Assembly: GCA_965637545.1 (NCBI GenBank)
Contig: OZ281494.1
Coordinates: forward strand, 6,200,001 to 6,264,000
Direction of reading: 5' to 3'
From: Phallusia mammillata
Lineage: Eukaryota
DNA: 64,000 nucleotides
Under the pieces are notes generated by a model. It searched no databases and was not told the DNA's origin. It saw only the letters and a program-made list of their open reading frames with translations. Position numbers and translations under genes: made by a program. Positions 32,180-46,959 of this stretch are shown one piece after another (the first letter of the stretch is position 1; every line of letters begins with the position of its first letter).

Positions 32180-33137
32180 TTATTTTGTTGCCTTCAACTT
32201 TTCCATAACGAGTTGTAAATTGTATTCACTCGTTGCAACGCTGCTATTTCGTTCTTCGTCGGTGAAATCTTCAGCCCTGAGTTTTGCTTTAATGGCTAAA
32301 CTGTAGTATTTTTTTGCATCTTTTAGTTGTGATTTTTGTCGATAAACAAAACCAAGGTTGTTTAACAGACGGCCGTATATTGAATGTTTAGAACTATCAT
32401 CTCCGAAGGTCGTTTTGATTTGCTCCAGTGCTCTTTTGATTGTGATTTTACTCGCCGTTAAATCGCCAATCAAACGTTGACTCAACTCGATGTGATGGAA
32501 ACAGCGGGCCTCTTGTAAGCATTGGGTTTCTTTGCTTATGCCCCTATGGTCTGAAATTTGTCGTCGCATTTCGTGCATGAGTGGAATCACGTGAAAGTTT
32601 ATAGTCTTCCAATTTTTGCTGTGGTCGGTTTCTTTTAGCATAGCCTGTACAGTTGCATACAATCCTTCTGTGCACGAAACAATACCATCAGACGCAAGTT
32701 TGCTGTCGCTATGAAGAGCAAAATAATCCGCTGCAACGTGGTAGAACAAGATTGATTCAAAATACTTTTTGTCCGTGGTAATTCTTTTAGCGAACGTTTT
32801 TAGTTCATCAGCTGTGGTGTCAACTTTTCGTCGAACCAACACAAGAAGTTCCTGTTCAACAAGATCGGCCTTGTGGTATTTTTCTTCGTGAATCAGGCGA
32901 GTATAGTGTTTCACCAGTTGTGTTTTTTGGGAATTTTGTCCTAAACACAAACGATTTCGTGATTGCAACAAGACTAATAGTTTTACCAGAACCGTTATCA
33001 CCTAATAAGTAGAATCATCATACAATACAGGAAAGAACATAAGTGTCATTATAGCATGGGAATATCAATGAGTCAAAATGTGACTTACCCGCAAATGTTT
33101 CAAGTGTAGCGGTGTCAGTATAAAGCAAGACCGCCAT
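32180..33137 (-). CDS. TPR-domain protein, paralog A (may extend further 5' with a hydrophobic segment)
   Basis: Exon 33137-33089 (MAVLLYTDTATLETFA, phase 1) joins exon 32940-32180. TPR-like helices include IYGRLLNNLGFVYRQKSQLKDAKKYYSLAIKAK. The frame stays open upstream to an acceptor at 33260. Confidence 0.8.
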
Positions 33138-34095
33138 GTTTAATATTACCACAAAGGATATTAATGACAGTAAGCATATGGCGACAAATTCTGAAACAAG
33201 AAACACAATTTGTTCGTAACCGTCTCGACTGGTTTCGCAAGAAAACAGACGAAAGGTAGCCTATACACCGGTTTGATGAGACATATACCAACACGGGTAC
33301 AGAGTAGGGTATTTTAACTCAACGCCATGTATAAACTTTGACGACAAGACGATACGACTCCCACTTACTACGTCCAATACATCAAAATTGGATTTCCAGA
33401 GATAATGCTTATTTGAAAAAAAACCTTTAACTTTACAACCGACCTAACGAGCCAGCTTTCTGTGCCACGAATGTTAGGTGAGCAAAGGCGCTTTCATTTG
33501 TTAGGAGAAAAGCAAGCTGACAAAACTGCGACAGAAAAGATAACGCGTTCGTGATGTATAACTCATTTTTCAATTTACTTAAATTACCCTCACTCAATCC
33601 CTTCTTCTTTAAAAAAATCCCCACACCCTTTTTAAACTTACATTACATTTTTTTGCTATCATACAATAAGAACTTCAAACCCTACTTTTTTGCACGGTGA
33701 TTTGCGATGAGTAAACGAAGCAAACTATGTACTAAAAATAACTTTCTATAAGGGTTCAAAAGTTTATGGCAAATCATATCATTTACTCATGCATACGTCA
33801 CTAATCCTTGCGCCTATACTTGCATTTATTTAATTTCTTTATTTGCTTCTACGGCCTTACCTGCCTATAGTTACGACTTTATGTTACCCGTCTACTGCTG
33901 CTGGCAATCGCTACCTGCAAGAATCCCGCTTTTTGCAACACTTACTGCAATTTCCAATACCACTTGTCTTTTGCAACCCCCCTTCTGCTTTTTGCAAACG
34001 TTGATACTGCTCTCTGCATTGTGCAACCAACACCTGCATTACTGCAACTTTTGCTGGAAGACGTCACCTTTTGTGCGTTTTTGTTCCTATTTATC

Positions 34096-36769
34096 TTAAA
34101 CTGGAGACGATAATGTTGAGGCGGAGCCAAACAAAACACGAAAAAAATAAAAGTAAAGGATTGAAACACAGTTTAAAGACACTTCTCTTTATAACTTACT
34201 GAAAGATGAAACTTGGTTGTTACCGAGTTGACCTTCTTCTTGTGGGTCAAAAAGATCTAAAATATTGGATGGCATGAGAAATGTGTAAGGCGCTTGTCAT
34301 ATATATGACACCAAAAACGTTTTTAAAAAGCATCAACCGATTAAAAAATAATAATCGGTGAAAATGTATTGGAAAATTTGTAACTTGTTTGCAACAAATG
34401 TTTTCTTTTCAAAAAAAAATGACGTGATTAAACACCGTTATATGATCTAAAACATTAGCAAACACCATTAATCCCGAAACTATGTTCTTTTTTACAAAAG
34501 TTGCTTTTCATTTGGAAATCGGTTACAGCTGCTCCGATTTTGTCAAACCTACAGTTAGGCTATACGCGCTTTGTACGTTATCCTTAATTTCTAGCGAAAA
34601 ATACTACCTTACCCCTTAAAGGTTCAACAGGAGGTGGGTTTGGACGTCGCCTGATGACATAGTTGAAATTTGTGCCTAAAACTGAACCAACACAAAGATA
34701 AACTAAAACCGGAAAAGTTCCTTTTTTGAAAACTTTAGTGCTTTACATATTTTGCTAGTGGATCAATTTCATTTAATTTGAAACCTTTTGTTTGTAATAT
34801 GACCAATTAGCTTTGTACACTGACGAAGCTCCGAAAAACAAAATTTGAAAAAAACAACAACATTATGTTGCCGAAATAATCAAAACTATTCAAAAGCTGG
34901 AAGGGACAAAGCATTCGAACAGCCTAACGTACTAAATGTCTCTGATTGAGTAGGAGTATCGTCTGGAATCTCAGTTTGGTCGGGAGCGGCTGTAACTGTC
35001 GCAGAAACCGAATCTCTTGCTGGTGACTCTAAAAATAGTAACACCGAAATTGGTAATAGTGTCAATGCTTTGTTTACATTAGAGTTGGGTTACAAGAAGC
35101 AGTCAAGCATTTCAGAAGATATGACTTGACAACAAGATCTTGCGCTTTTCATCTGGGACACTGGGACCCAGGGACACAGAAACATGGTGGATTGTGTGTC
35201 GAAAGTCGATTTTTATAAAACTACTTGACGCGATTTCTGCAAATGTTAGCTTCTAACATGGAAACGTCAGATCAGCCTTTAAATATTTATTGGTTTAACT
35301 TTATCACGTACCTGTTTGATGTAACGCACTTTCATCTGATTCGTATGGCGGAGTTGAGCTTCTACTGTAGGTTTTCTCTCCGTTTGGTTCTACAAACAAT
35401 AAACACATCAATCACCTGGTCAGATTTTGAAACAGCTTTACCTGGTTTTGAATTTTGTTCACCTTGAAAAGACCCCAAACGATATGAGAATAATTTGAGT
35501 GGAACCATCTTGTCCTTAGTTTTCTCTGGTTGTTGTTCATTTAGCTTGAGTTGCCTCACAACATCCGTCTCCTGCCGAAGCAGAGCGTCAGGATCTTGCT
35601 TGTCAAGTAGTTGCTGCAGAATGTCGACGACTTCATCCATGTTTGGGCGTTGTGACGGGTCTTGTGCCCAGCATCTCTTCATCAGTTGCACGAGTTGCTC
35701 CATGGTTTCCTTGTCATCATCATCCAGAGTTTCCACCCACTCGTGTAGCTGCTGACAATCTGGTCTCATCCCTTGACCGACTCCTTCCAGTACCCGTTGT
35801 TTATTCTGTAATTGGTAAGGTTGCTTTCGCATTAAAACGGTGTAAGTGGTTATGCCAAATGCGTAAATATCAAGCTCTTTTGTCGGTTTCATGTACGGAT
35901 CTCTTATTTTTTCTGGAGCGGTATAGTAGGGCGTGTATTGTTGCTTTTCTTTCCTGCTTCTTGCCAATGGATTTTGAGGTGTTGACGTGCTCAGAGTTGC
36001 TAGCTCCGCTGAACCGAAATCAGCTATTTTGCACAGCAACGTTTCTGTCAGAAGAATGTTTCCTGGTTTTAAGTCCGCGTGAATAAGTCGTTTGTCGGGT
36101 AAATTATGACAAGCTTTAATTCCTTTTGCAGTTTGAGTCAAAAACCGAAGACGCAGTGCGTTGCCCAAATCAATATTGGGTTCTAAAAGTAGTGTCTGTA
36201 GATCTCCTCCTTTGCAATATTCCATGACGATCCCCATCGTAAAAGCCCACTCGACGTGGCCATGAACTTGAACTATATGTTCATTTTTTGCTTTTTGCAA
36301 ATGTTGCATTTCTTGTTTAAATCTGTGGAATAAAAAACAGTTTGCTTGTCCCATCCAGAAAAGCCCAAGAACTATAAAATTACTAACGTTTTTTTCGTTA
36401 ACGACTTTCCCCTTTCCCCTGTGGTAATAAGAAACGTCTTAACAGCCACATCGTGTTGTAAAAGTATGCTATGTCCAAACACAACATACGCAAAACCACC
36501 AGAGCCGGCCGCGTAATCTTTGGGGTTGCACAAAATTTCACCAGCATCAAATTCAACGACCTTTATAAGAAAAGTCCCTGATGATTTTTTAAATTAGTAA
36601 AATAAACTAGTGAAAATAATGTAACAAAAACTAAGTTAGATTAAATTAAATGACAAAAAATAATTGTGAAATATATTATGAGAAGTGAAAGTTATTATAA
36701 CTTAGTCTATATTATACACCATAAATTACAATTTTCATTATTTTTACTTACATTCTCGTTCCCTTCCAT
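34096..36769 (-). CDS. RIP-kinase-like (TKL group) Ser/Thr kinase with a low-complexity tail, ~456 aa in the short model
   Basis: Exons 36769-36752 (MEGNEN), 36560-36388 (AGSGGFAYV, VAVK), 36322-35442 (alphaC Glu, IVMEY, HADLKPGN, DFG, YTAPE), then phase-1 exons 35389-35312, 35028-34933, 34675-34613, 34256-34200 and a possible last exon from 34100 (stop at once; AATAAA at 33830-33825). The 3' end is uncertain. Confidence 0.88.
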
Positions 36770-40779: not shown

Positions 40780-41952
40780 TTAGCTCAAACTTGCTAAAGC
40801 ACAACAACGAAAAGCAATAAAAATCAGCGCAATAAAAACACCAAATACGAACTTCCGTGCTATTTGCAGATTATCTTCAGTATTTGCAATAGCATTATCT
40901 ATCGCCCCTATATTTTCCCCAGCATAATCTTTTGCTGTCTTATAAGCATCCAACGCTTTCGTGTAGTAAATTTCTGCTTCTTTATTTCGAATTGTTTCCG
41001 TCAAAAGAACTCCAAGGTTGTTTAATAAGTCACCGTACACCACAAATCTCGAACTTTTCTCTCCGAATCTCTCTTCCATAAATTTTAGTGCCAATTTTAT
41101 TGTTTCTTCACTCGGCAAAAAATCCTCTATGTAATATTGACACAATGCAATATGTAGCAAACATTGAGCTTCACGAACCCATCGATTGTATGGTACCGTA
41201 TTTTCCAAATTTTGGATTTTGTGCCGCATTTCATGCATAAGTGGGATCACGTGATTACGTACAAACCGCTTATCATAATAAAACCACTCATATTTGTTTT
41301 CCATAATAGCTTTTGTAGTGTTTTTCAATCCTTCCGTGATTCTGGCGAACCCTAACGCTGCAGAATTCCCCTCCGGATGTTTTTCTTGAAAATTCGATGC
41401 CATGTGGTAAAAAAAAACTGATTCCAAATAGTTTTTATCGTATGTTAGTTTCTGGGCGAACTCCCTTAATTCATCAACTGTAGAAACAAATACTAGCTCC
41501 GGCATCTTCAAAACTTTTTGCTGCACTTGATTAGCTGCGTCGTAGTTTTCTTGGTTTATAAATCTTTTGTATTCTTTCGCCAGTCGCAAGTATTCAGAAT
41601 TTTCCCCTTAAAAAGGAAATATTTTGAATCAATATAATTGCTATCAGCAAAAAGTGCTTTAAAAGTTTACGGTGTAATGGAGTTTATATACAATGGACTA
41701 AATTTAAAACTTTGTGAACACTTACTTTGAAATTTTTCAAGAGGGCTGTAATCGTGACGTGAAAGCAGGAAAGCAATCAATGTAATCGCAATACATACGA
41801 TTAAAAACCCAGGAATACGGAAACCTAAAAAAGCATATTTGAAACAACATATTTAAATTCTCGTTTTGGCCAGTTCCATTCTTGTCTGGCCGTTTGAACG
41901 CCCAAACACACTTTACGTTTAAAAACTTACGTTGATAGTTGTCCAAGTCCAT
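40780..41952 (-). CDS. TPR-domain protein, paralog B, with a C-terminal hydrophobic tail
   Basis: Exons 41952-41931 (MDLDNYQ, phase 1) and 41606-40780. Shares HVIPLMHEMR, ES(I/V)(L/F)FYH, EA(R/Q)C and YG.LLNNLG with paralog A. Ends FVFGVFIALIFIAFRCCALASLS. Confidence 0.88.
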
Positions 41953-43779: not shown

Positions 43780-44490
43780 TCTATTGGGCTATTTCAAATC
43801 GGTTTAAACCAGATTGGAAAATCGACAACTTTGAACTCATTTTTTTAAAGGCTATAGATATTCCATTTTTTCGATTTTTGGGGGGTGAAACATTGAAGCA
43901 GTTTTCGGTGGATTCTCGCAAGAATATTCAAGTTTCCAACCGGTTCTGGCCGGTTTCTGCCTCCTACCGAACCTCCAAACCGGTTTAAACCAGATTCAAA
44001 AACCTACAATTTTGACCCGATTTTTGAAAAAACCCTAAGGCTATAGCTATTCCGCTTTATCGATGTTTGGTGGTCAAAAATGAAAAAAAATCTGGTTTTG
44101 GGTGGGTATTCGCCGGAATATTCTGGTTTCAAACTGGTTCTGACCGGTTTCTGCTTCCTACCGAATGTACAAACCGGTTTAAAGCAGATTCGAAAATCGA
44201 CAATTTTGACCCGATTTTTGAAAAAAAACTTATAGCCTTTTTGTTTATTCGATTTTAGGGGTCAAAAAATGGAAGAAAAGTCCTGTGTTTGTTGGATTTT
44301 TGCCGGAATATTCAAGTTTCAGATTAGTTCTAACTGGTTTCTGCTTCCTACCGAACCTCTAAATCGGTTTAACCGGAATCGAAAATCGACAACTTTGACC
44401 CGATTTTTGAAAAAAGTTATAGCCTTTCCGTTTTATTCGATTTTAGGGGTCAAAAAATGGAAGAAAAGTCCGGTTTTGGGTGGGTTTTGT
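43780..44490 (+). repeat. Tandem array of a ~190-bp unit
   Basis: Unit tattc(a/t)agtttc..ccggtttctgc.tcctaccgaacctccaaaccggtttaaa..gaaaatcgacaattttgacccgatttttgaaaaa recurs near 43925, 44120 and 44310. Confidence 0.85.
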
Positions 44491-45070
44491 ATTTCTAGAT
44501 GCAACCTTAATGAAGACCTGAAGAAAAGTTTTTATCAAAGTTGCTGTTGTGTCGCTCAAATAAACAAAAAGTTGAGAGCGATTTGTTGTTGTTTTTGCTA
44601 CTCTATATGTGCAGGGACTTATGTGACCATTTGTACGCGCTGCTGGAGTTCACCCAACAAAAACAACTCACAATAAGATCAATATTTTACAACTCAAATA
44701 AGGTCAATAATTGTTTTCCCGCTCAATACCGCTTGTGTTGCATGAAAAACTAATTAGAAATAACTGATATTTATGGATTTATTCATACTAGGATCAGCCC
44801 GAAAGCCTCCATGCAGACCAGCGATCACGACATACTCATTTATAAATCATAGTACGCCAGGCCTATTAAAGGCGTCATACCTGATCAACCCGGTCTCCCA
44901 AGCATTCCAAAATGACAAAGCACAGGCTAAAAATTCTCAGGTCCCGGAAAGACTCCTGTCAAGGGTTCGAATCTCACCGCATGCTAGGTATTTATAGTCT
45001 GTGCCTTGTCATATGCTTGGAAGACCGGCCGCATTCGGTATAACGCCTCAACAAATTCAGATGGCTTTTT
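44490..45070 (+). repeat. Duplicated block, partner about 46465-47180
   Basis: Colinear blocks: tgcaacc.taa.gaagac.tgaagaaaagtttt, ccgctcaataccgcttgtgttgcat, cagaccagcga.cacgaca.actcat, and the embedded TIR element. Confidence 0.8.
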
Positions 45071-45881
45071 ACTTTTCTAATGTTTTGTCATTCAAAACGA
45101 AAAAAAAAAGATTTACTACATTCAGATACAATTTGGTAATGACACCAAAAAAAAACAGAAATTTTAGAAAAACTGTGACAAAATTTGGTTACATTTCAAA
45201 GTTTGGAATAAAATTCCCAAGATAAAATTGGTAACCGCACGACCGCTTTCAACTCCAAGGACTATTGATTCAAAGCAAAATGTTATACGCTGATCCAGCA
45301 GCAATTACTTACTACGTTTAACACAGACATGTTTCATGCCGCAGCAAACCGGAATCAATTCAGCAAGGCTCATTTTTCACAAGAACTTGAGAAGGAAATA
45401 AATTTGACAGTTCGTTTTCAACAGATGTTTGCGAAACGATTCGAAGAATGAAAGCTGCTTCAATCTTGCAAAGTGTTTTCAGTGGTAACTTACAACTTTC
45501 TCGAAGTGCAGATTTTACTTAATAGTGTAGTCCTGGTAGTCAGACTTATTAGTCGTTATTACCCTGTATATTGGTATAGAAATAATTGTGTTGAGTAGTT
45601 TGCCATTATGAGATGTTAAAACATCGGCTAAGTTACACAGAAGTGCCAGTTGAGCAAAAATGGAAAATTAAATCATTCACAAGTTTCTGTGTTGTTCAAT
45701 AACAATTGTGTTGGGTATCCGACATTGATAAAAAAGACGCCCAGTTTAGGACGTCGAAACGTCGAAGGTCTTGTATATATTTGCCGGTTAAACAGAGAAA
45801 AGTTTATGAAATATGCCTGGTAACAATACTATACTCAACAACAATTGTGTTTTAATTTAGTATTGTGTATGAATCCGCAAA

Positions 45882-46281
45882 ATGAACAAAGTACTGTTGT
45901 TGGCATTGGTGGCTTGTGTGATGCTCATGTGCATTGATATGGCTCATGCCCAATATCCTGATGAAGAAACCGAAATGAAAGAAAATTGTAAGTAACTCGT
46001 CAAATCCATTTTTCCCAGTTATTTCTGATACAACAAATAGAACTTCATCCATCAAACCACATCGAATACAAGAGCTTAAGTGTAAATGCTGCAATAATCT
46101 TCCCCCATTCAAGCTAGACTTTATACATTACACAATGTGCTTTCTTCACCGGCACGTGTATATTAAATGCAAAATAAAGTTTAAAAAATTATCTTCTTCT
46201 ACAGTTATCTCGCTATTGGAGGATGTTTTGGCGAAATACGAGGCTGACAAGTTTCGTGGCGAAATGGAAGATAAAAAGTAA
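45882..46281 (+). CDS. Small secreted peptide precursor (60 aa, 2 exons)
   Basis: Exons 45882-45987 and 46205-46281 (GTAAGT donor, ttctacag acceptor, phase 1): MNKVLLLALVACVMLMCIDMAHA-QYPDEETEMKENFISLLEDVLAKYEADKFRGEMEDKK*. Upstream acceptor at 45860; AATAAA at 46309-46314. Confidence 0.75.
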
Positions 46282-46959
46282 AACCATGAAACAAAAAGGT
46301 AACTGTCAAATAAATCAGTACATTACAACGCAGTTTTACTTGTTATCCATGGTTTCGCACGAATTGTTAACTAGCAATTTTATAGAGACCAGTAAACAAA
46401 TGTCTTTTTAACCTGACCATAGGAATCAGAATATTTTTCTTGTTTTAAACGGTTTTGTATTTTTAGGTGCAACCCTAACGAAGACTTGAAGAAAAGTTTT
46501 TATCAAAATTGCTATTATATCGCTCTAATAAACAGAACTTGAGAGTGATTTGTTTGTGTTTTGCTATGTACTCTATAGGTGTTTCGCCCAAACATAAGAA
46601 AATTATGTTTGTCGAATAGTGTACAAATTCCAGTTACTACGAACTTCGCTGCAATATTTATGCTTCAAACGTTATTTCGACGAACATTTGTAGAACAACG
46701 TCATAATAGTATATAGGTGCAGGGACTAATGTGACCATTTGGTGGCGCTGCTTGGGTTTACTTACCCATAACAAAACCCAGTAAGTTCAAACTTAGGTTT
46801 TGTGCATTAATTGTTTATACAATCTAGTTCCGCTCAATACCGCTTGTGTTGCATAAAAAAAATAATTGGAAATAACTAAGATGAACACACAATCATGCCG
46901 GAATCAGCTCTGAAGCGGCGATCCAGACCAGCGAACACGACACACTCATATGTAAATTA

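What the first reader, a model, noticed from the sequence alone, without database searches (positions are those of the whole stretch)
45882..46314. Unannotated 60-aa secreted peptide precursor invisible to the ORF track
Seen: a strong signal peptide ending A-H-A, a mature part starting with Gln, canonical phase-1 splice sites, a stop codon and AATAAA 28 nt later. The 37-aa mature part is acidic, Cys-free and has an amphipathic helix (FISLLEDVLAKYEADKF), followed by RG and a terminal KK. Established: N-terminal Gln cyclises to pyroglutamate in many peptide hormones; ascidian defence-peptide precursors carry anionic helical segments; Gly can donate a C-terminal amide. Inference: a novel hormone-like, anionic antimicrobial or metal-binding peptide. 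It has no cationic core and I recognise no family.
Basis: partly seen in the sequence, partly recalled or inferred. Interest (0 to 1): 0.7.

Follow-up and report, generated by a model that had tools for sequence, protein, structure and literature searches.

The report
Acidic-core sea-squirt secreted peptide gene
This is a real, spliced and transcribed mini-gene for a 60-residue secreted peptide, a stray member of a roughly 20-copy gene family built like sea-squirt antimicrobial-peptide precursors, except that the usual arginine-rich segment is replaced here by an acidic one.

Summary
The gene model is in the sequence as described. Exon 1 is 45882-45987, a GT..AG phase-1 intron follows, and exon 2 runs 46205-46281 with the stop. 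One RNA-type public run holds a contig that joins 45987 to 46205 exactly; two DNA runs do not.

The gene is not family-less. Its 23-residue signal exon is 90-95% identical in DNA to at least 20 other signal exons, mostly in a cluster on chromosome piece C5. Its exon 2 fits that family's acidic tail (ISxLED...KK). Most members carry an Arg-rich core (+3 to +9) between signal and tail. This copy and two sister copies on C5 carry a short acidic core instead.

The layout (conserved signal, hypervariable core, acidic tail) is that of published Ciona antimicrobial-peptide precursor candidates (PMC7387483).

The Gly is not an amide donor. The helix is no more amphipathic than shuffles. AATAAA at 46309 probably lies in a 3'UTR intron, and the conserved poly(A) signal is at 46527.

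Expression is low and the protein is only weakly constrained (dN/dS about 0.7). The reading frame has survived better than neutral drift predicts. Function is untested.

The scan had already noted families of this kind elsewhere in this genome.

The parts
45700..45843 (.). Dispersed repeat directly upstream of the gene. It is also present upstream of the two sister copies.
   Evidence: One search found at least 35 copies genome-wide at 74-88% identity. In one search, DNA-run depth reaches about 57,000 against a baseline of about 130. One search aligns it to the C5 copies at 76%.
45789..45881 (+). Conserved proximal upstream region (promoter and 5'UTR, inferred). A TATA-like TATATATT lies just before it at 45774-45781, and there is an A at -3 of the ATG.
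   Evidence: One search gives 85% identity to the C5 sister copies, against 76% for intron 1. One search shows the sequence. The promoter role is inferred.
45882..45950 (+). Signal-peptide part of exon 1 (23 residues, ending A-H-A).
   Evidence: One search gives the translation. Searches show 90-95% nt identity to at least 20 family signal exons, with 74-83% aa identity over the 23 residues for the closest copies and 68-70% for the C5b copies. One search shows a hydrophobic core with Ala at -3 and -1.
45951..45987 (+). Variable core. Here it is acidic (QYPDEETEMKEN, net -4) and ends in the family's usual Asn. The last base starts the split Phe codon.
   Evidence: Identity to the sister copies is only 68%, with a 6-nt in-frame indel. 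Cores of the 22 members modelled run from -4 to +9.
45988..46204 (+). Intron 1 (217 nt, GT..AG, phase 1).
   Evidence: One search shows the joint 45987->46205 in an X1 contig, absent from DNA runs X2 and X3.
46205..46298 (+). Exon 2: acidic tail (F + ISLLEDVLAKYEADKFRGEMEDKK), TAA at 46279-46281, then 17 nt of 3'UTR.
   Evidence: One search gives the translation. One search shows it fits the family tail consensus ISxLED..KK, with 75% identity to the sister copies and 52% to the tail of an Arg-core member on C4. One search scores it at 35.1 bits against the tail profile. One search gives 89% nt identity of the coding part to the sister copy. The X1 contig covers 46205-46300.
46299..46466 (+). 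Probable intron 2 in the 3'UTR (AAG|GTAACT ... TTTTTAG|GTGCAAC).
   Evidence: The X1 contig stops fitting at 46300 with 11 letters left over, which is the exact end expected if it continues into exon 3, whose first two letters are GT. Identity to the sister copies is only 63% here, between two conserved blocks. This is inferred, not shown.
46467..46550 (+). Probable exon 3 (3'UTR) with the family's poly(A) signal AATAAACAG at 46527-46535. The 3' end is approximate.
   Evidence: One search gives 84% identity to the sister copies. One search finds only four copies in the genome. One search shows the AATAAACAGAAA block behind many family members.
44483..44611 (+). Orphan copy of the third exon, with no exon 1 or 2 beside it. 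It is probably the remnant of a lost tandem copy.
   Evidence: Searches give 83% identity to 46451-46581.

Best explanation
This is a real gene, most likely of three exons, and a dispersed DNA-level duplicate of a lineage-specific secreted-peptide family that I call the MNKV family after its signal. The family has about 24 signal exons and 16 tail exons in this genome. Its main cluster is at C5:1.649-1.693 Mb, and this is the only copy on C1.

Family members are built as a near-invariant 23-residue signal, a hypervariable core that mostly ends in Asn, a phase-1 intron, an acidic tail (ISxLED...KK), and a short 3'UTR exon carrying AATAAACAG. In most members the core is Arg-rich. That gives the layout of ascidian antimicrobial-peptide precursors: signal, cationic peptide, anionic pro-piece.

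In this copy and its two C5 sisters the core has become short and acidic. The predicted product is a 37-residue, Cys-free peptide with net charge -6.

Shown here: transcription and exact splicing in one run, family membership, and retention of the ORF.

Inferred: entry into the ER and signal-peptidase cleavage after A-H-A; cyclisation of the new N-terminal Gln; possible cleavage at the Asn|Phe core-tail border; trimming of the terminal KK.

Mechanistically the peptide is a pro-piece without a warhead. It cannot act as a cationic membrane-active peptide. My best guess is that it is a weakly constrained, low-expressed offshoot of core diversification. If its secreted acidic peptide does anything, it most likely serves as a counter-ion or partner for cationic molecules such as its Arg-rich paralogs.
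For: The sequence and frame are confirmed. The spliced contig sits at the predicted joint, and neither the DNA runs nor the assembly hold a retrocopy. The signal exon is shared at 90-95% nt identity while the flanks are unalignable. The sister copies keep the same structure and frame. Arg-core members have a homologous exon 2. The tail profile hits only family loci, this one included, at 35.1 bits and E=7.6e-6. The third exon and its poly(A) block are conserved. Signal plus tail are more conserved than the intron: 125/143 against 158/209, Fisher p=0.004. An intact ORF is expected in under 1% of neutral simulations. A divergent allele with 12 substitutions in 45927-45970 stays in frame, keeps Gln+1 and keeps an acidic core. 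Ciona precursor candidates have the same layout, and one family's 23-residue signal consensus starts MNK with an acidic residue at position 19 (PMC7387483).
Against: Expression evidence is one 173-nt contig at depth 3.77 in a run whose RNA nature is a guess. A paralog's transcript in the same run stands at depth 656, and 11 other RNA-type runs hold next to none of its words. dN/dS against the sister copy is 0.70 on only 47 codons, which is weak protein-level constraint. Part of the exon conservation could come from gene conversion within the family. The link to the Ciona families rests on layout and by-eye motif likeness, not on a scored alignment. Exon 3 is inferred. No protein, processing site or activity has been seen.
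Confidence: 0.72

Rival explanations
1. One reading: a stand-alone, novel bioactive peptide (hormone-like, anionic antimicrobial or metal-binding), matured by pyroglutamate formation and C-terminal amidation or trimming, with a dedicated function of its own.
For: The gene is secreted, spliced and transcribed. Gln at +1 is kept in all three acidic copies and in the divergent allele. The acidic character of the core is kept in both alleles and in the sister copies, at -4, -3 and -2. The ORF is retained.
Against: There are no internal dibasic sites. The Gly is followed by Glu and is Ser in the sister copies, so there is no amide donor. KK is the generic family ending. The helix is no more amphipathic than shuffles. 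There is no His or Cys for metal binding. dN/dS is 0.7. Expression is low. No family or look-alike was found by Pfam, the word search or the Atlas.
Confidence: 0.12
2. A transcribed but functionless copy: a family member whose core mutated away from the cationic state and which is on its way to becoming a pseudogene. The orphan third exon 1.9 kb upstream would be an earlier casualty of the same process.
For: Depth is very low against a paralog in the same run. dN/dS is 0.70. The copy is isolated from the main cluster. A decayed neighbour copy lies at 44483-44611. Family clusters contain broken copies.
Against: The frame is intact in the three acidic copies and in a second allele despite about 24% intron divergence, which occurs in under 1% of neutral simulations. 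The only coding indel is in frame. Promoter-proximal, signal, tail and 3'UTR blocks are all better conserved than the introns.
Confidence: 0.14
3. Not a gene: a chance pairing of two short open frames with splice-like sites.
For: Each exon is short, and no ORF finder or protein database lists the gene.
Against: An exact GT..AG joint stands in an RNA-type contig. Paralogs have the same structure.
Confidence: 0.02

Closest known systems
Ciona LCAMP precursor candidates of Ohtsuka and Inagaki 2020 (PMC7387483), especially the family with the 23-residue signal consensus MNKSALLxLLxxGLxVLxExxxA (KH.S921.1 and others) and the Arg-rich KH.C1.640
   Same: The precursor is small (50-100 aa) and the mature part is Cys-free. 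The signal is highly conserved and also 23 residues, beginning MNK, with an acidic residue at position 19 and Ala at position 23. A hypervariable middle part is followed by a C-terminal anionic region. Arg-rich cores such as W..RRRR occur in the paralogs here. The KH.C1.640 tail holds ISDMLAKED, which resembles ISLLEDVLAKYEAD here.
   Different: This copy has no cationic segment at all (core -4). The likeness to the Ciona sequences was judged by eye from the paper's table and is not a scored alignment. In the Ciona MNKS family the anionic part is short or absent, whereas here it is the best-conserved coding part after the signal. Synthetic cationic parts of the Ciona genes were shown to kill bacteria; nothing has been tested for this peptide.
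Ci-MAM-A / Ci-PAP-A precursors (Fedders and Leippe 2008, as cited in PMC7387483)
   Same: Both have the order signal, cationic helix, anionic helical pro-region. The Ci-MAM-A anionic helix begins F...IEDEL..SEMD and ends ..DEKQ. By eye it lines up with F..LLEDVL..YEAD....EDKK here.
   Different: The signal family is different (MDRKIVFAL...). This copy lacks the active cationic peptide. Homology is unproven.
Other families of the same layout in this genome, noted earlier by this scan (s1-375376, s1-351724, s1-395741, s1-408601)
   Same: They share the same organism and the same layout: a shared signal, an Arg-rich hypervariable core, an acidic tail, and small unannotated spliced genes.
   Different: Neither the window's signal nor the tail profile hit any other place on C1. 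The C1 clusters in those notes are therefore separate families, or too diverged to detect. The notes describe cationic members, and this copy is the acidic-core exception.
Conserved-signal, hypervariable-product gene families in general (frog skin peptide and cone-snail toxin precursors); from my own knowledge
   Same: Signal-exon conservation is sharply bounded: about 62-85 nt at 90-95% identity, beside a product region that cannot be aligned.
   Different: These are unrelated lineages and sequences. The resemblance is one of evolutionary mode only.

Membership tests
MNKV secreted-peptide family of this genome (unnamed) | Shared 23-residue signal exon | tested here: met
   Searches show 90-95% nt identity to members on C5, C7, C4, C3 and C6, with 74-83% aa identity over the 23 residues for the closest copies and 68-70% for the C5b copies.
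MNKV secreted-peptide family of this genome (unnamed) | Phase-1 intron right after a core that usually ends in Asn | tested here: met
   In the window the core ends ..KEN, followed by T|GTAAGT. Asn ends exon 1 in 14 of the 22 members modelled.
MNKV secreted-peptide family of this genome (unnamed) | Second exon encodes an acidic tail with consensus ISxLED...ExKK | tested here: met
   Alignment A2. The genome-wide profile search places the window's exon 2 among 16 hits, all at family loci.
MNKV secreted-peptide family of this genome (unnamed) | Short 3'UTR exon with AATAAACAG(AAA) | tested here: met
   The sequence block is present and conserved. Its splicing in this copy is inferred only from where the X1 contig stops fitting.
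MNKV secreted-peptide family of this genome (unnamed) | Arg-rich cationic core (the majority state, not universal) | tested here: not met
   The core charge here is -4. The sister copies are -2. Other members range from -1 to +9 and include Pro-rich near-neutral cores.
Ascidian linear cationic alpha-helical AMP precursors (Ci-MAM, Ci-PAP, KH.S921, KH.C1.640; criteria of PMC7387483) | Signal peptide, 50-100 residues in total, no Cys after the signal | tested here: met
   The precursor has 60 residues, a hydrophobic 23-residue leader with A-x-A, and a Cys-free mature part. SignalP itself was not available.
Ascidian linear cationic alpha-helical AMP precursors (Ci-MAM, Ci-PAP, KH.S921, KH.C1.640; criteria of PMC7387483) | Cationic amphipathic helical segment | tested here: not met
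   The mature part has net charge -6 and no cationic stretch.
Ascidian linear cationic alpha-helical AMP precursors (Ci-MAM, Ci-PAP, KH.S921, KH.C1.640; criteria of PMC7387483) | C-terminal anionic helical region | tested here: inconclusive
   An acidic tail is present and conserved. Helicity was not predicted, because each exon is under 30 residues and the joined form was not folded. The hydrophobic moment is not above shuffles.
Ascidian linear cationic alpha-helical AMP precursors (Ci-MAM, Ci-PAP, KH.S921, KH.C1.640; criteria of PMC7387483) | Sequence homology to a Ciona member | tested here: inconclusive
   There is only by-eye likeness of the signal consensus and tail motifs to the paper's text. 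The word search with the 40-residue open frame around exon 1 found nothing of 22-70 residues.
Ascidian linear cationic alpha-helical AMP precursors (Ci-MAM, Ci-PAP, KH.S921, KH.C1.640; criteria of PMC7387483) | Antimicrobial activity of the released peptide | not testable with these tools
   This needs a synthetic peptide and assays.
Amidated or pyroglutamyl peptide-hormone precursors | Gly followed by a basic cleavage site as amide donor | tested here: not met
   Here the sequence is F-R-G-E, with Gly followed by Glu. It is R-S-D in both sister copies.
Amidated or pyroglutamyl peptide-hormone precursors | Mono- or dibasic sites that flank the released peptide | tested here: not met
   The only basic pair is the C-terminal KK, which 8 of 14 family tails share.
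Amidated or pyroglutamyl peptide-hormone precursors | N-terminal Gln after the signal cleavage site | tested here: met
   Gln is at +1 in the window copy, in both C5 sister copies and in the divergent allele. Cyclisation itself was not tested.

The most novel reading that the evidence does not exclude
The acidic-core copies (this gene and its two C5 sisters) could be a pro-piece turned into a product. In this reading, a defence-peptide precursor shed its cationic warhead and now secretes the anionic part alone. The peptide would act either as a trans-acting neutraliser or packaging partner for the very Arg-rich peptides of its paralogs, or as an anionic effector in its own right, with a pyroglutamyl N-terminus.
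Probability: 0.12. Interest if true: 0.55.

Novelty: new variant of a known kind. Interest (0 to 1): 0.33.

Why it matters
The finding adds a transcribed, unannotated mini-gene to a sea-squirt genome. It also shows that the hypervariable core of an antimicrobial-precursor-like family can swing from +9 to -4 while the signal, the tail and the 3'UTR exon stay fixed. If the acidic copies are functional, they would be a natural test of what the anionic pro-piece of such precursors does on its own. If they are not, they mark how such families shed members. In practical terms, whole families of 60-75-residue two-exon precursors escape both ORF lists and protein databases.

Tried and rejected
- **Word search of the large protein collection.** I used the 40-residue open frame around exon 1 and no candidate shared three words. 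This covers only proteins of 22-70 residues.
- **Pfam on each exon.** Only sub-threshold noise turned up (DUF4141 and GRP, 13-14 bits against cut-offs of 30).
- **ESM Atlas on exon 1.** No usable hit.
- **Six-frame search of the genome with the single 24-residue exon 2.** It found only the two sister copies. The 14-row tail profile was needed to reach the Arg-core members.
- **Amphipathic helix.** Rejected as a statistically supported feature.
- **Gly as amide donor and KK as a specific processing signal.** Rejected.
- **AATAAA at 46309 as the poly(A) signal.** Probably wrong.
- **Retrocopy explanation of the spliced contig.** Rejected, because the assembly has no intron-less copy.
- **A second upstream gene copy.** Only an orphan third exon is left.
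- **Literature on Phallusia antimicrobial peptides.** No paper in the library.
- **Not run.**
  - The exhaustive representative search, because exon-sized queries are too short to reach significance there.
  - Structure prediction, because each exon is under 30 residues or is mostly signal peptide.
- Any search or fold of the joined 60-residue product. The joined frame was used only for local counts of charge and ORF survival inside scripts.

Full report
**What is in the sequence**

The window reads as a eukaryotic genome of about 37% G+C. It is position 6,200,001-6,264,000 of piece C1 of a 240-Mb assembly. Earlier notes of this scan call the assembly the sea squirt Phallusia mammillata, which I did not test.

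- ATG is at 45882.
- Exon 1 gives 35 codons plus one base, to 45987. That is a 23-residue leader ending A-H-A, then QYPDEETEMKEN.
- GTAAGT follows at 45988, and a pyrimidine-rich tract ends in AG at 46204.
- Exon 2 runs from 46205. The split codon reads Phe, 24 more codons end in KK, and TAA is at 46279-46281.
- AATAAA is at 46309-46314.

The mature part is 37 residues, net charge -6, without Cys. A six-frame ORF list shows nothing for the gene.

**Is it expressed?**

Fourteen runs of the same species label were found. Two of them (X2, X3) hold the whole locus and behave as DNA. One small RNA-type run (X1) holds 13% of the words.

Laid on 45300-46900, X1 gives a 173-nt contig at depth 3.77. 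It covers 45922-45987 and continues directly at 46205-46300. This is a joint that skips 217 nt with GT..AG ends, exactly as predicted. X2 and X3 show no such joint, and the assembly holds no intron-less copy. The splice is therefore real and comes from the reference-like allele.

The evidence is thin. It is one contig, at low depth, in a run whose RNA nature is a guess on record. A contig of a paralog that shares the signal exon stands at depth 656 in the same run.

**The gene has a family**

- **Signal exon.** The exon-1 peptide finds 23 further places in the genome. DNA of 45878-45939 is 90-95% identical to a string of copies at C5:1.649-1.693 Mb. Smaller groups lie at C7:21.08-21.10 Mb and C5:19.69-19.70 Mb, and single copies lie on C3, C4, C5 and C6. 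Conservation is sharply bounded: about 62-85 nt from ATG-4 onward, with nothing alignable beyond.
- **Core.** After the signal, most copies encode W or FW plus a run of Arg, with core charge from +3 to +9. They usually end in Asn, then split a codon at a phase-1 donor.
- **Tail.** Three neighbouring Arg-core genes align over 900 nt. They show a second exon reading ISELEDAVETL...EEKK followed by a stop. Fourteen second exons, fetched by reference, align to the consensus ISxLED..E..D...F.......ExKK. The window's exon 2 is 75% identical to its two sister copies and 52% to the tail of a gene on C4 whose core is GRRRRGDVRPRN. A profile of these tails searched over the whole genome gives 16 hits, all at family loci. 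The window's hit scores 35.1 bits at E=7.6e-6.
- **Core range.** The family core is truly hypervariable. Besides Arg-rich cores there are Pro-rich, near-neutral ones (SPPIGDM.., AHPPPPHPGG..).

**The sister copies**

Two near-identical genes at C5:1675354 and C5:1684122 match the window gene over the whole unit: upstream region, both coding exons, intron and downstream block. They keep the ATG, the phase-1 donor, the acceptor and the frame. Their product is the signal, then QRGEADVQES, then F ISQLEDVLAKYEADMLRSDMED(T/A)KW.

Identity to the window by segment:

| Segment | Identity to C5 sister copy |
|---|---|
| Proximal upstream | 85% |
| Signal | 86% |
| Core | 68%, with one in-frame 6-nt indel |
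| Intron 1 | 76%, with many indels |
| Exon 2 coding | 89% |
| 20 nt from the stop codon (stop + 17 nt 3'UTR) | 35% |
| Next 168 nt (probable intron 2) | 63% |
| 79-nt block at 46467-46545 | 84% |

- Signal plus tail are more conserved than the intron: 125/143 against 158/209, Fisher p=0.004.
- dN/dS is 0.70 on 47 codons, which is weak protein-level constraint.
- An ORF drifting at the intron's substitution and indel rates stayed intact in 0.75% of 20,000 simulations. The indel rate was counted by eye, so this figure is rough.

**A third exon**

The conserved block at 46467-46545 carries AATAAACAG at 46527-46535. The same block, AATAAACAGAAA behind a ..CAG acceptor, follows many family members. 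The window's version has only four copies in the genome.

AAG|GTAACT at 46298/46299 is a good donor 17 nt after the stop, and TTTTTAG|GTGCAAC at 46466/46467 is a good acceptor. The X1 contig stops fitting at 46300 with 11 letters left. That is exactly what a contig running on into an exon that starts with GT would show, and it is not what a poly(A) tail would show.

I therefore read the gene as three exons with a 3'UTR intron. That intron lies close enough to the stop not to invite nonsense-mediated decay, by the general rule as I know it. This part is inferred.

**Variation**

The DNA runs show no insertions or deletions in the gene. One X2 contig carries the window's intron and exon 2 almost unchanged, but has 12 substitutions and no indel in 45927-45970. 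Translated, the signal end and core read ..VCIGIADA QVHNEDIEMKEN. Nine of the eleven changed codons are replacements, Gln+1 is kept, and the core charge is -3.

Upstream of 45897 that contig leaves the window's sequence. It is either a strongly divergent allele or an unassembled copy, and I could not tell which.

- Signal peptide: the features are sound (n-region with Lys, 15 hydrophobic residues, Ala at -3 and -1). SignalP was not available.
- Gln+1: conserved in all acidic copies.
- Gly as amide donor: not supported. It is followed by Glu and is Ser in the sister copies.
- Terminal KK: a family-wide ending, seen in 8 of 14 tails.
- Amphipathic helix: the best 18-residue hydrophobic moment is 0.289, and 59% of shuffles of the same residues reach it.

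**Comparison with what is known**

Pfam, the word search and the Atlas give nothing. I found no paper on such peptides in Phallusia.

Ohtsuka and Inagaki (PMC7387483) list 22 Ciona candidates for linear cationic antimicrobial-peptide precursors. These are 50-100 residues, have a signal, are Cys-free, and carry a cationic helix; in 17 of them an anionic helical C-terminal region follows. The authors stress conserved signals.

One new family there has a 23-residue consensus MNKSALLxLLxxGLxVLxExxxA. The primer for KH.S921.1 starts ATGAACAAG... The signal here is also 23 residues, starts MNK, and has Asp at position 19 and Ala at position 23.

KH.C1.640 has a W..RRRR core and a tail containing ISDMLAKED. 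Synthetic cationic parts of five candidates, KH.C1.640 and KH.S921.1 among them, killed bacteria in that paper, and these two kept their activity at high salt.

The kind is therefore known, and the paralogs here look like new members of it.

This particular copy fails the defining test of that kind, since it has no cationic segment. I file it as an acidic-core variant of the family, not as an antimicrobial-peptide precursor.

**How it most likely works**

Shown: the gene is transcribed and spliced, it belongs to the family, and its frame has been kept.

Inferred:
- The leader takes the product into the secretory path and is cut after A-H-A.
- The exposed Gln may cyclise.
- The conserved Asn at the end of exon 1, present in 14 of 22 members, marks the border where Arg-core members would be cut into peptide and pro-piece.
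- KK is probably trimmed.

In Arg-core paralogs the tail roughly balances the core's charge, for example +7 against -7. This fits the pro-piece role described for such precursors. Here there is nothing to balance.

My odds for the origin and function of this copy:
- About 0.9 that this is a real member gene.
- About 0.45 that it is a weakly selected by-product of core diversification with little role of its own.
- About 0.15 that it is already functionless.
- About 0.12 that the acidic peptide has gained a role as a trans partner of cationic paralogs or as an anionic effector.
- About 0.05 that it is hormone-like.

**Limits**

No search or fold was run with the joined product; the exons were handled apart, by reference. 

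The scan had already noted families of this layout on other DNA of this genome (s1-375376, s1-351724, s1-395741, s1-408601). Those notes gave me the organism's name and the lead to the Ciona literature. What is new here is the acidic-core exception and its transcript.

Noticed in passing
window 44483-44611 (+): An orphan copy (83%) of the gene's third (3'UTR) exon lies 1.9 kb upstream, with no recognisable exon 1 or 2 beside it. It is probably the last trace of a lost tandem copy. This block has only four copies in the whole genome.
   Followed up: partly
window 45700-45843: A dispersed repeat has at least 35 scored copies, and its DNA-run depth reaches about 57,000 against a baseline of about 130. 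It abuts the gene's conserved promoter-proximal region and also lies upstream of the C5 sister copies. It contains the palindromic GACGTCGAAACGTC.
   Followed up: no
window 46276-46279 with 46467 onward; L023 (C5 sister copies): A GT formed by the last base of the final Lys codon and the first base of the stop (AA|GTAAAA) would splice in frame to the third exon, giving K + CNPNEDLKKSFYQ... The same in-frame possibility exists in the C5 copies (AA|GTGGTG + A TGC AAC...). The observed transcript does not use it, because it reads through to 46300. This is unexplained and may be coincidence.
   Followed up: partly
window 45927-45970: One contig of DNA run X2 carries 12 substitutions in 44 nt (nine replacements, no indel), linked to an otherwise near-identical intron and exon 2. 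Upstream of 45897 it diverges from the window. In run X3 the contigs break in just this interval. It is either a very divergent allele of the variable core or an unassembled copy.
   Followed up: partly
G000 C5:1649000-1693000 (L017, L022, L018, L023, L019): This is the main cluster of the family, with about 13 signal exons on both strands. It includes Arg-run cores (up to eight Arg in a row), Pro-rich cores and at least one broken copy. No member of 22-70 residues is in the large protein collection, so the family appears to be unannotated.
   Followed up: partly
window 40780-41589 (-): A 269-codon open frame has weak tetratricopeptide-repeat matches (TPR_10, 25.5 bits, just under the cut-off of 27.5) and a hydrophobic C-terminus. 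It may belong with the TPR gene that another note places at 32180-36769.
   Followed up: no
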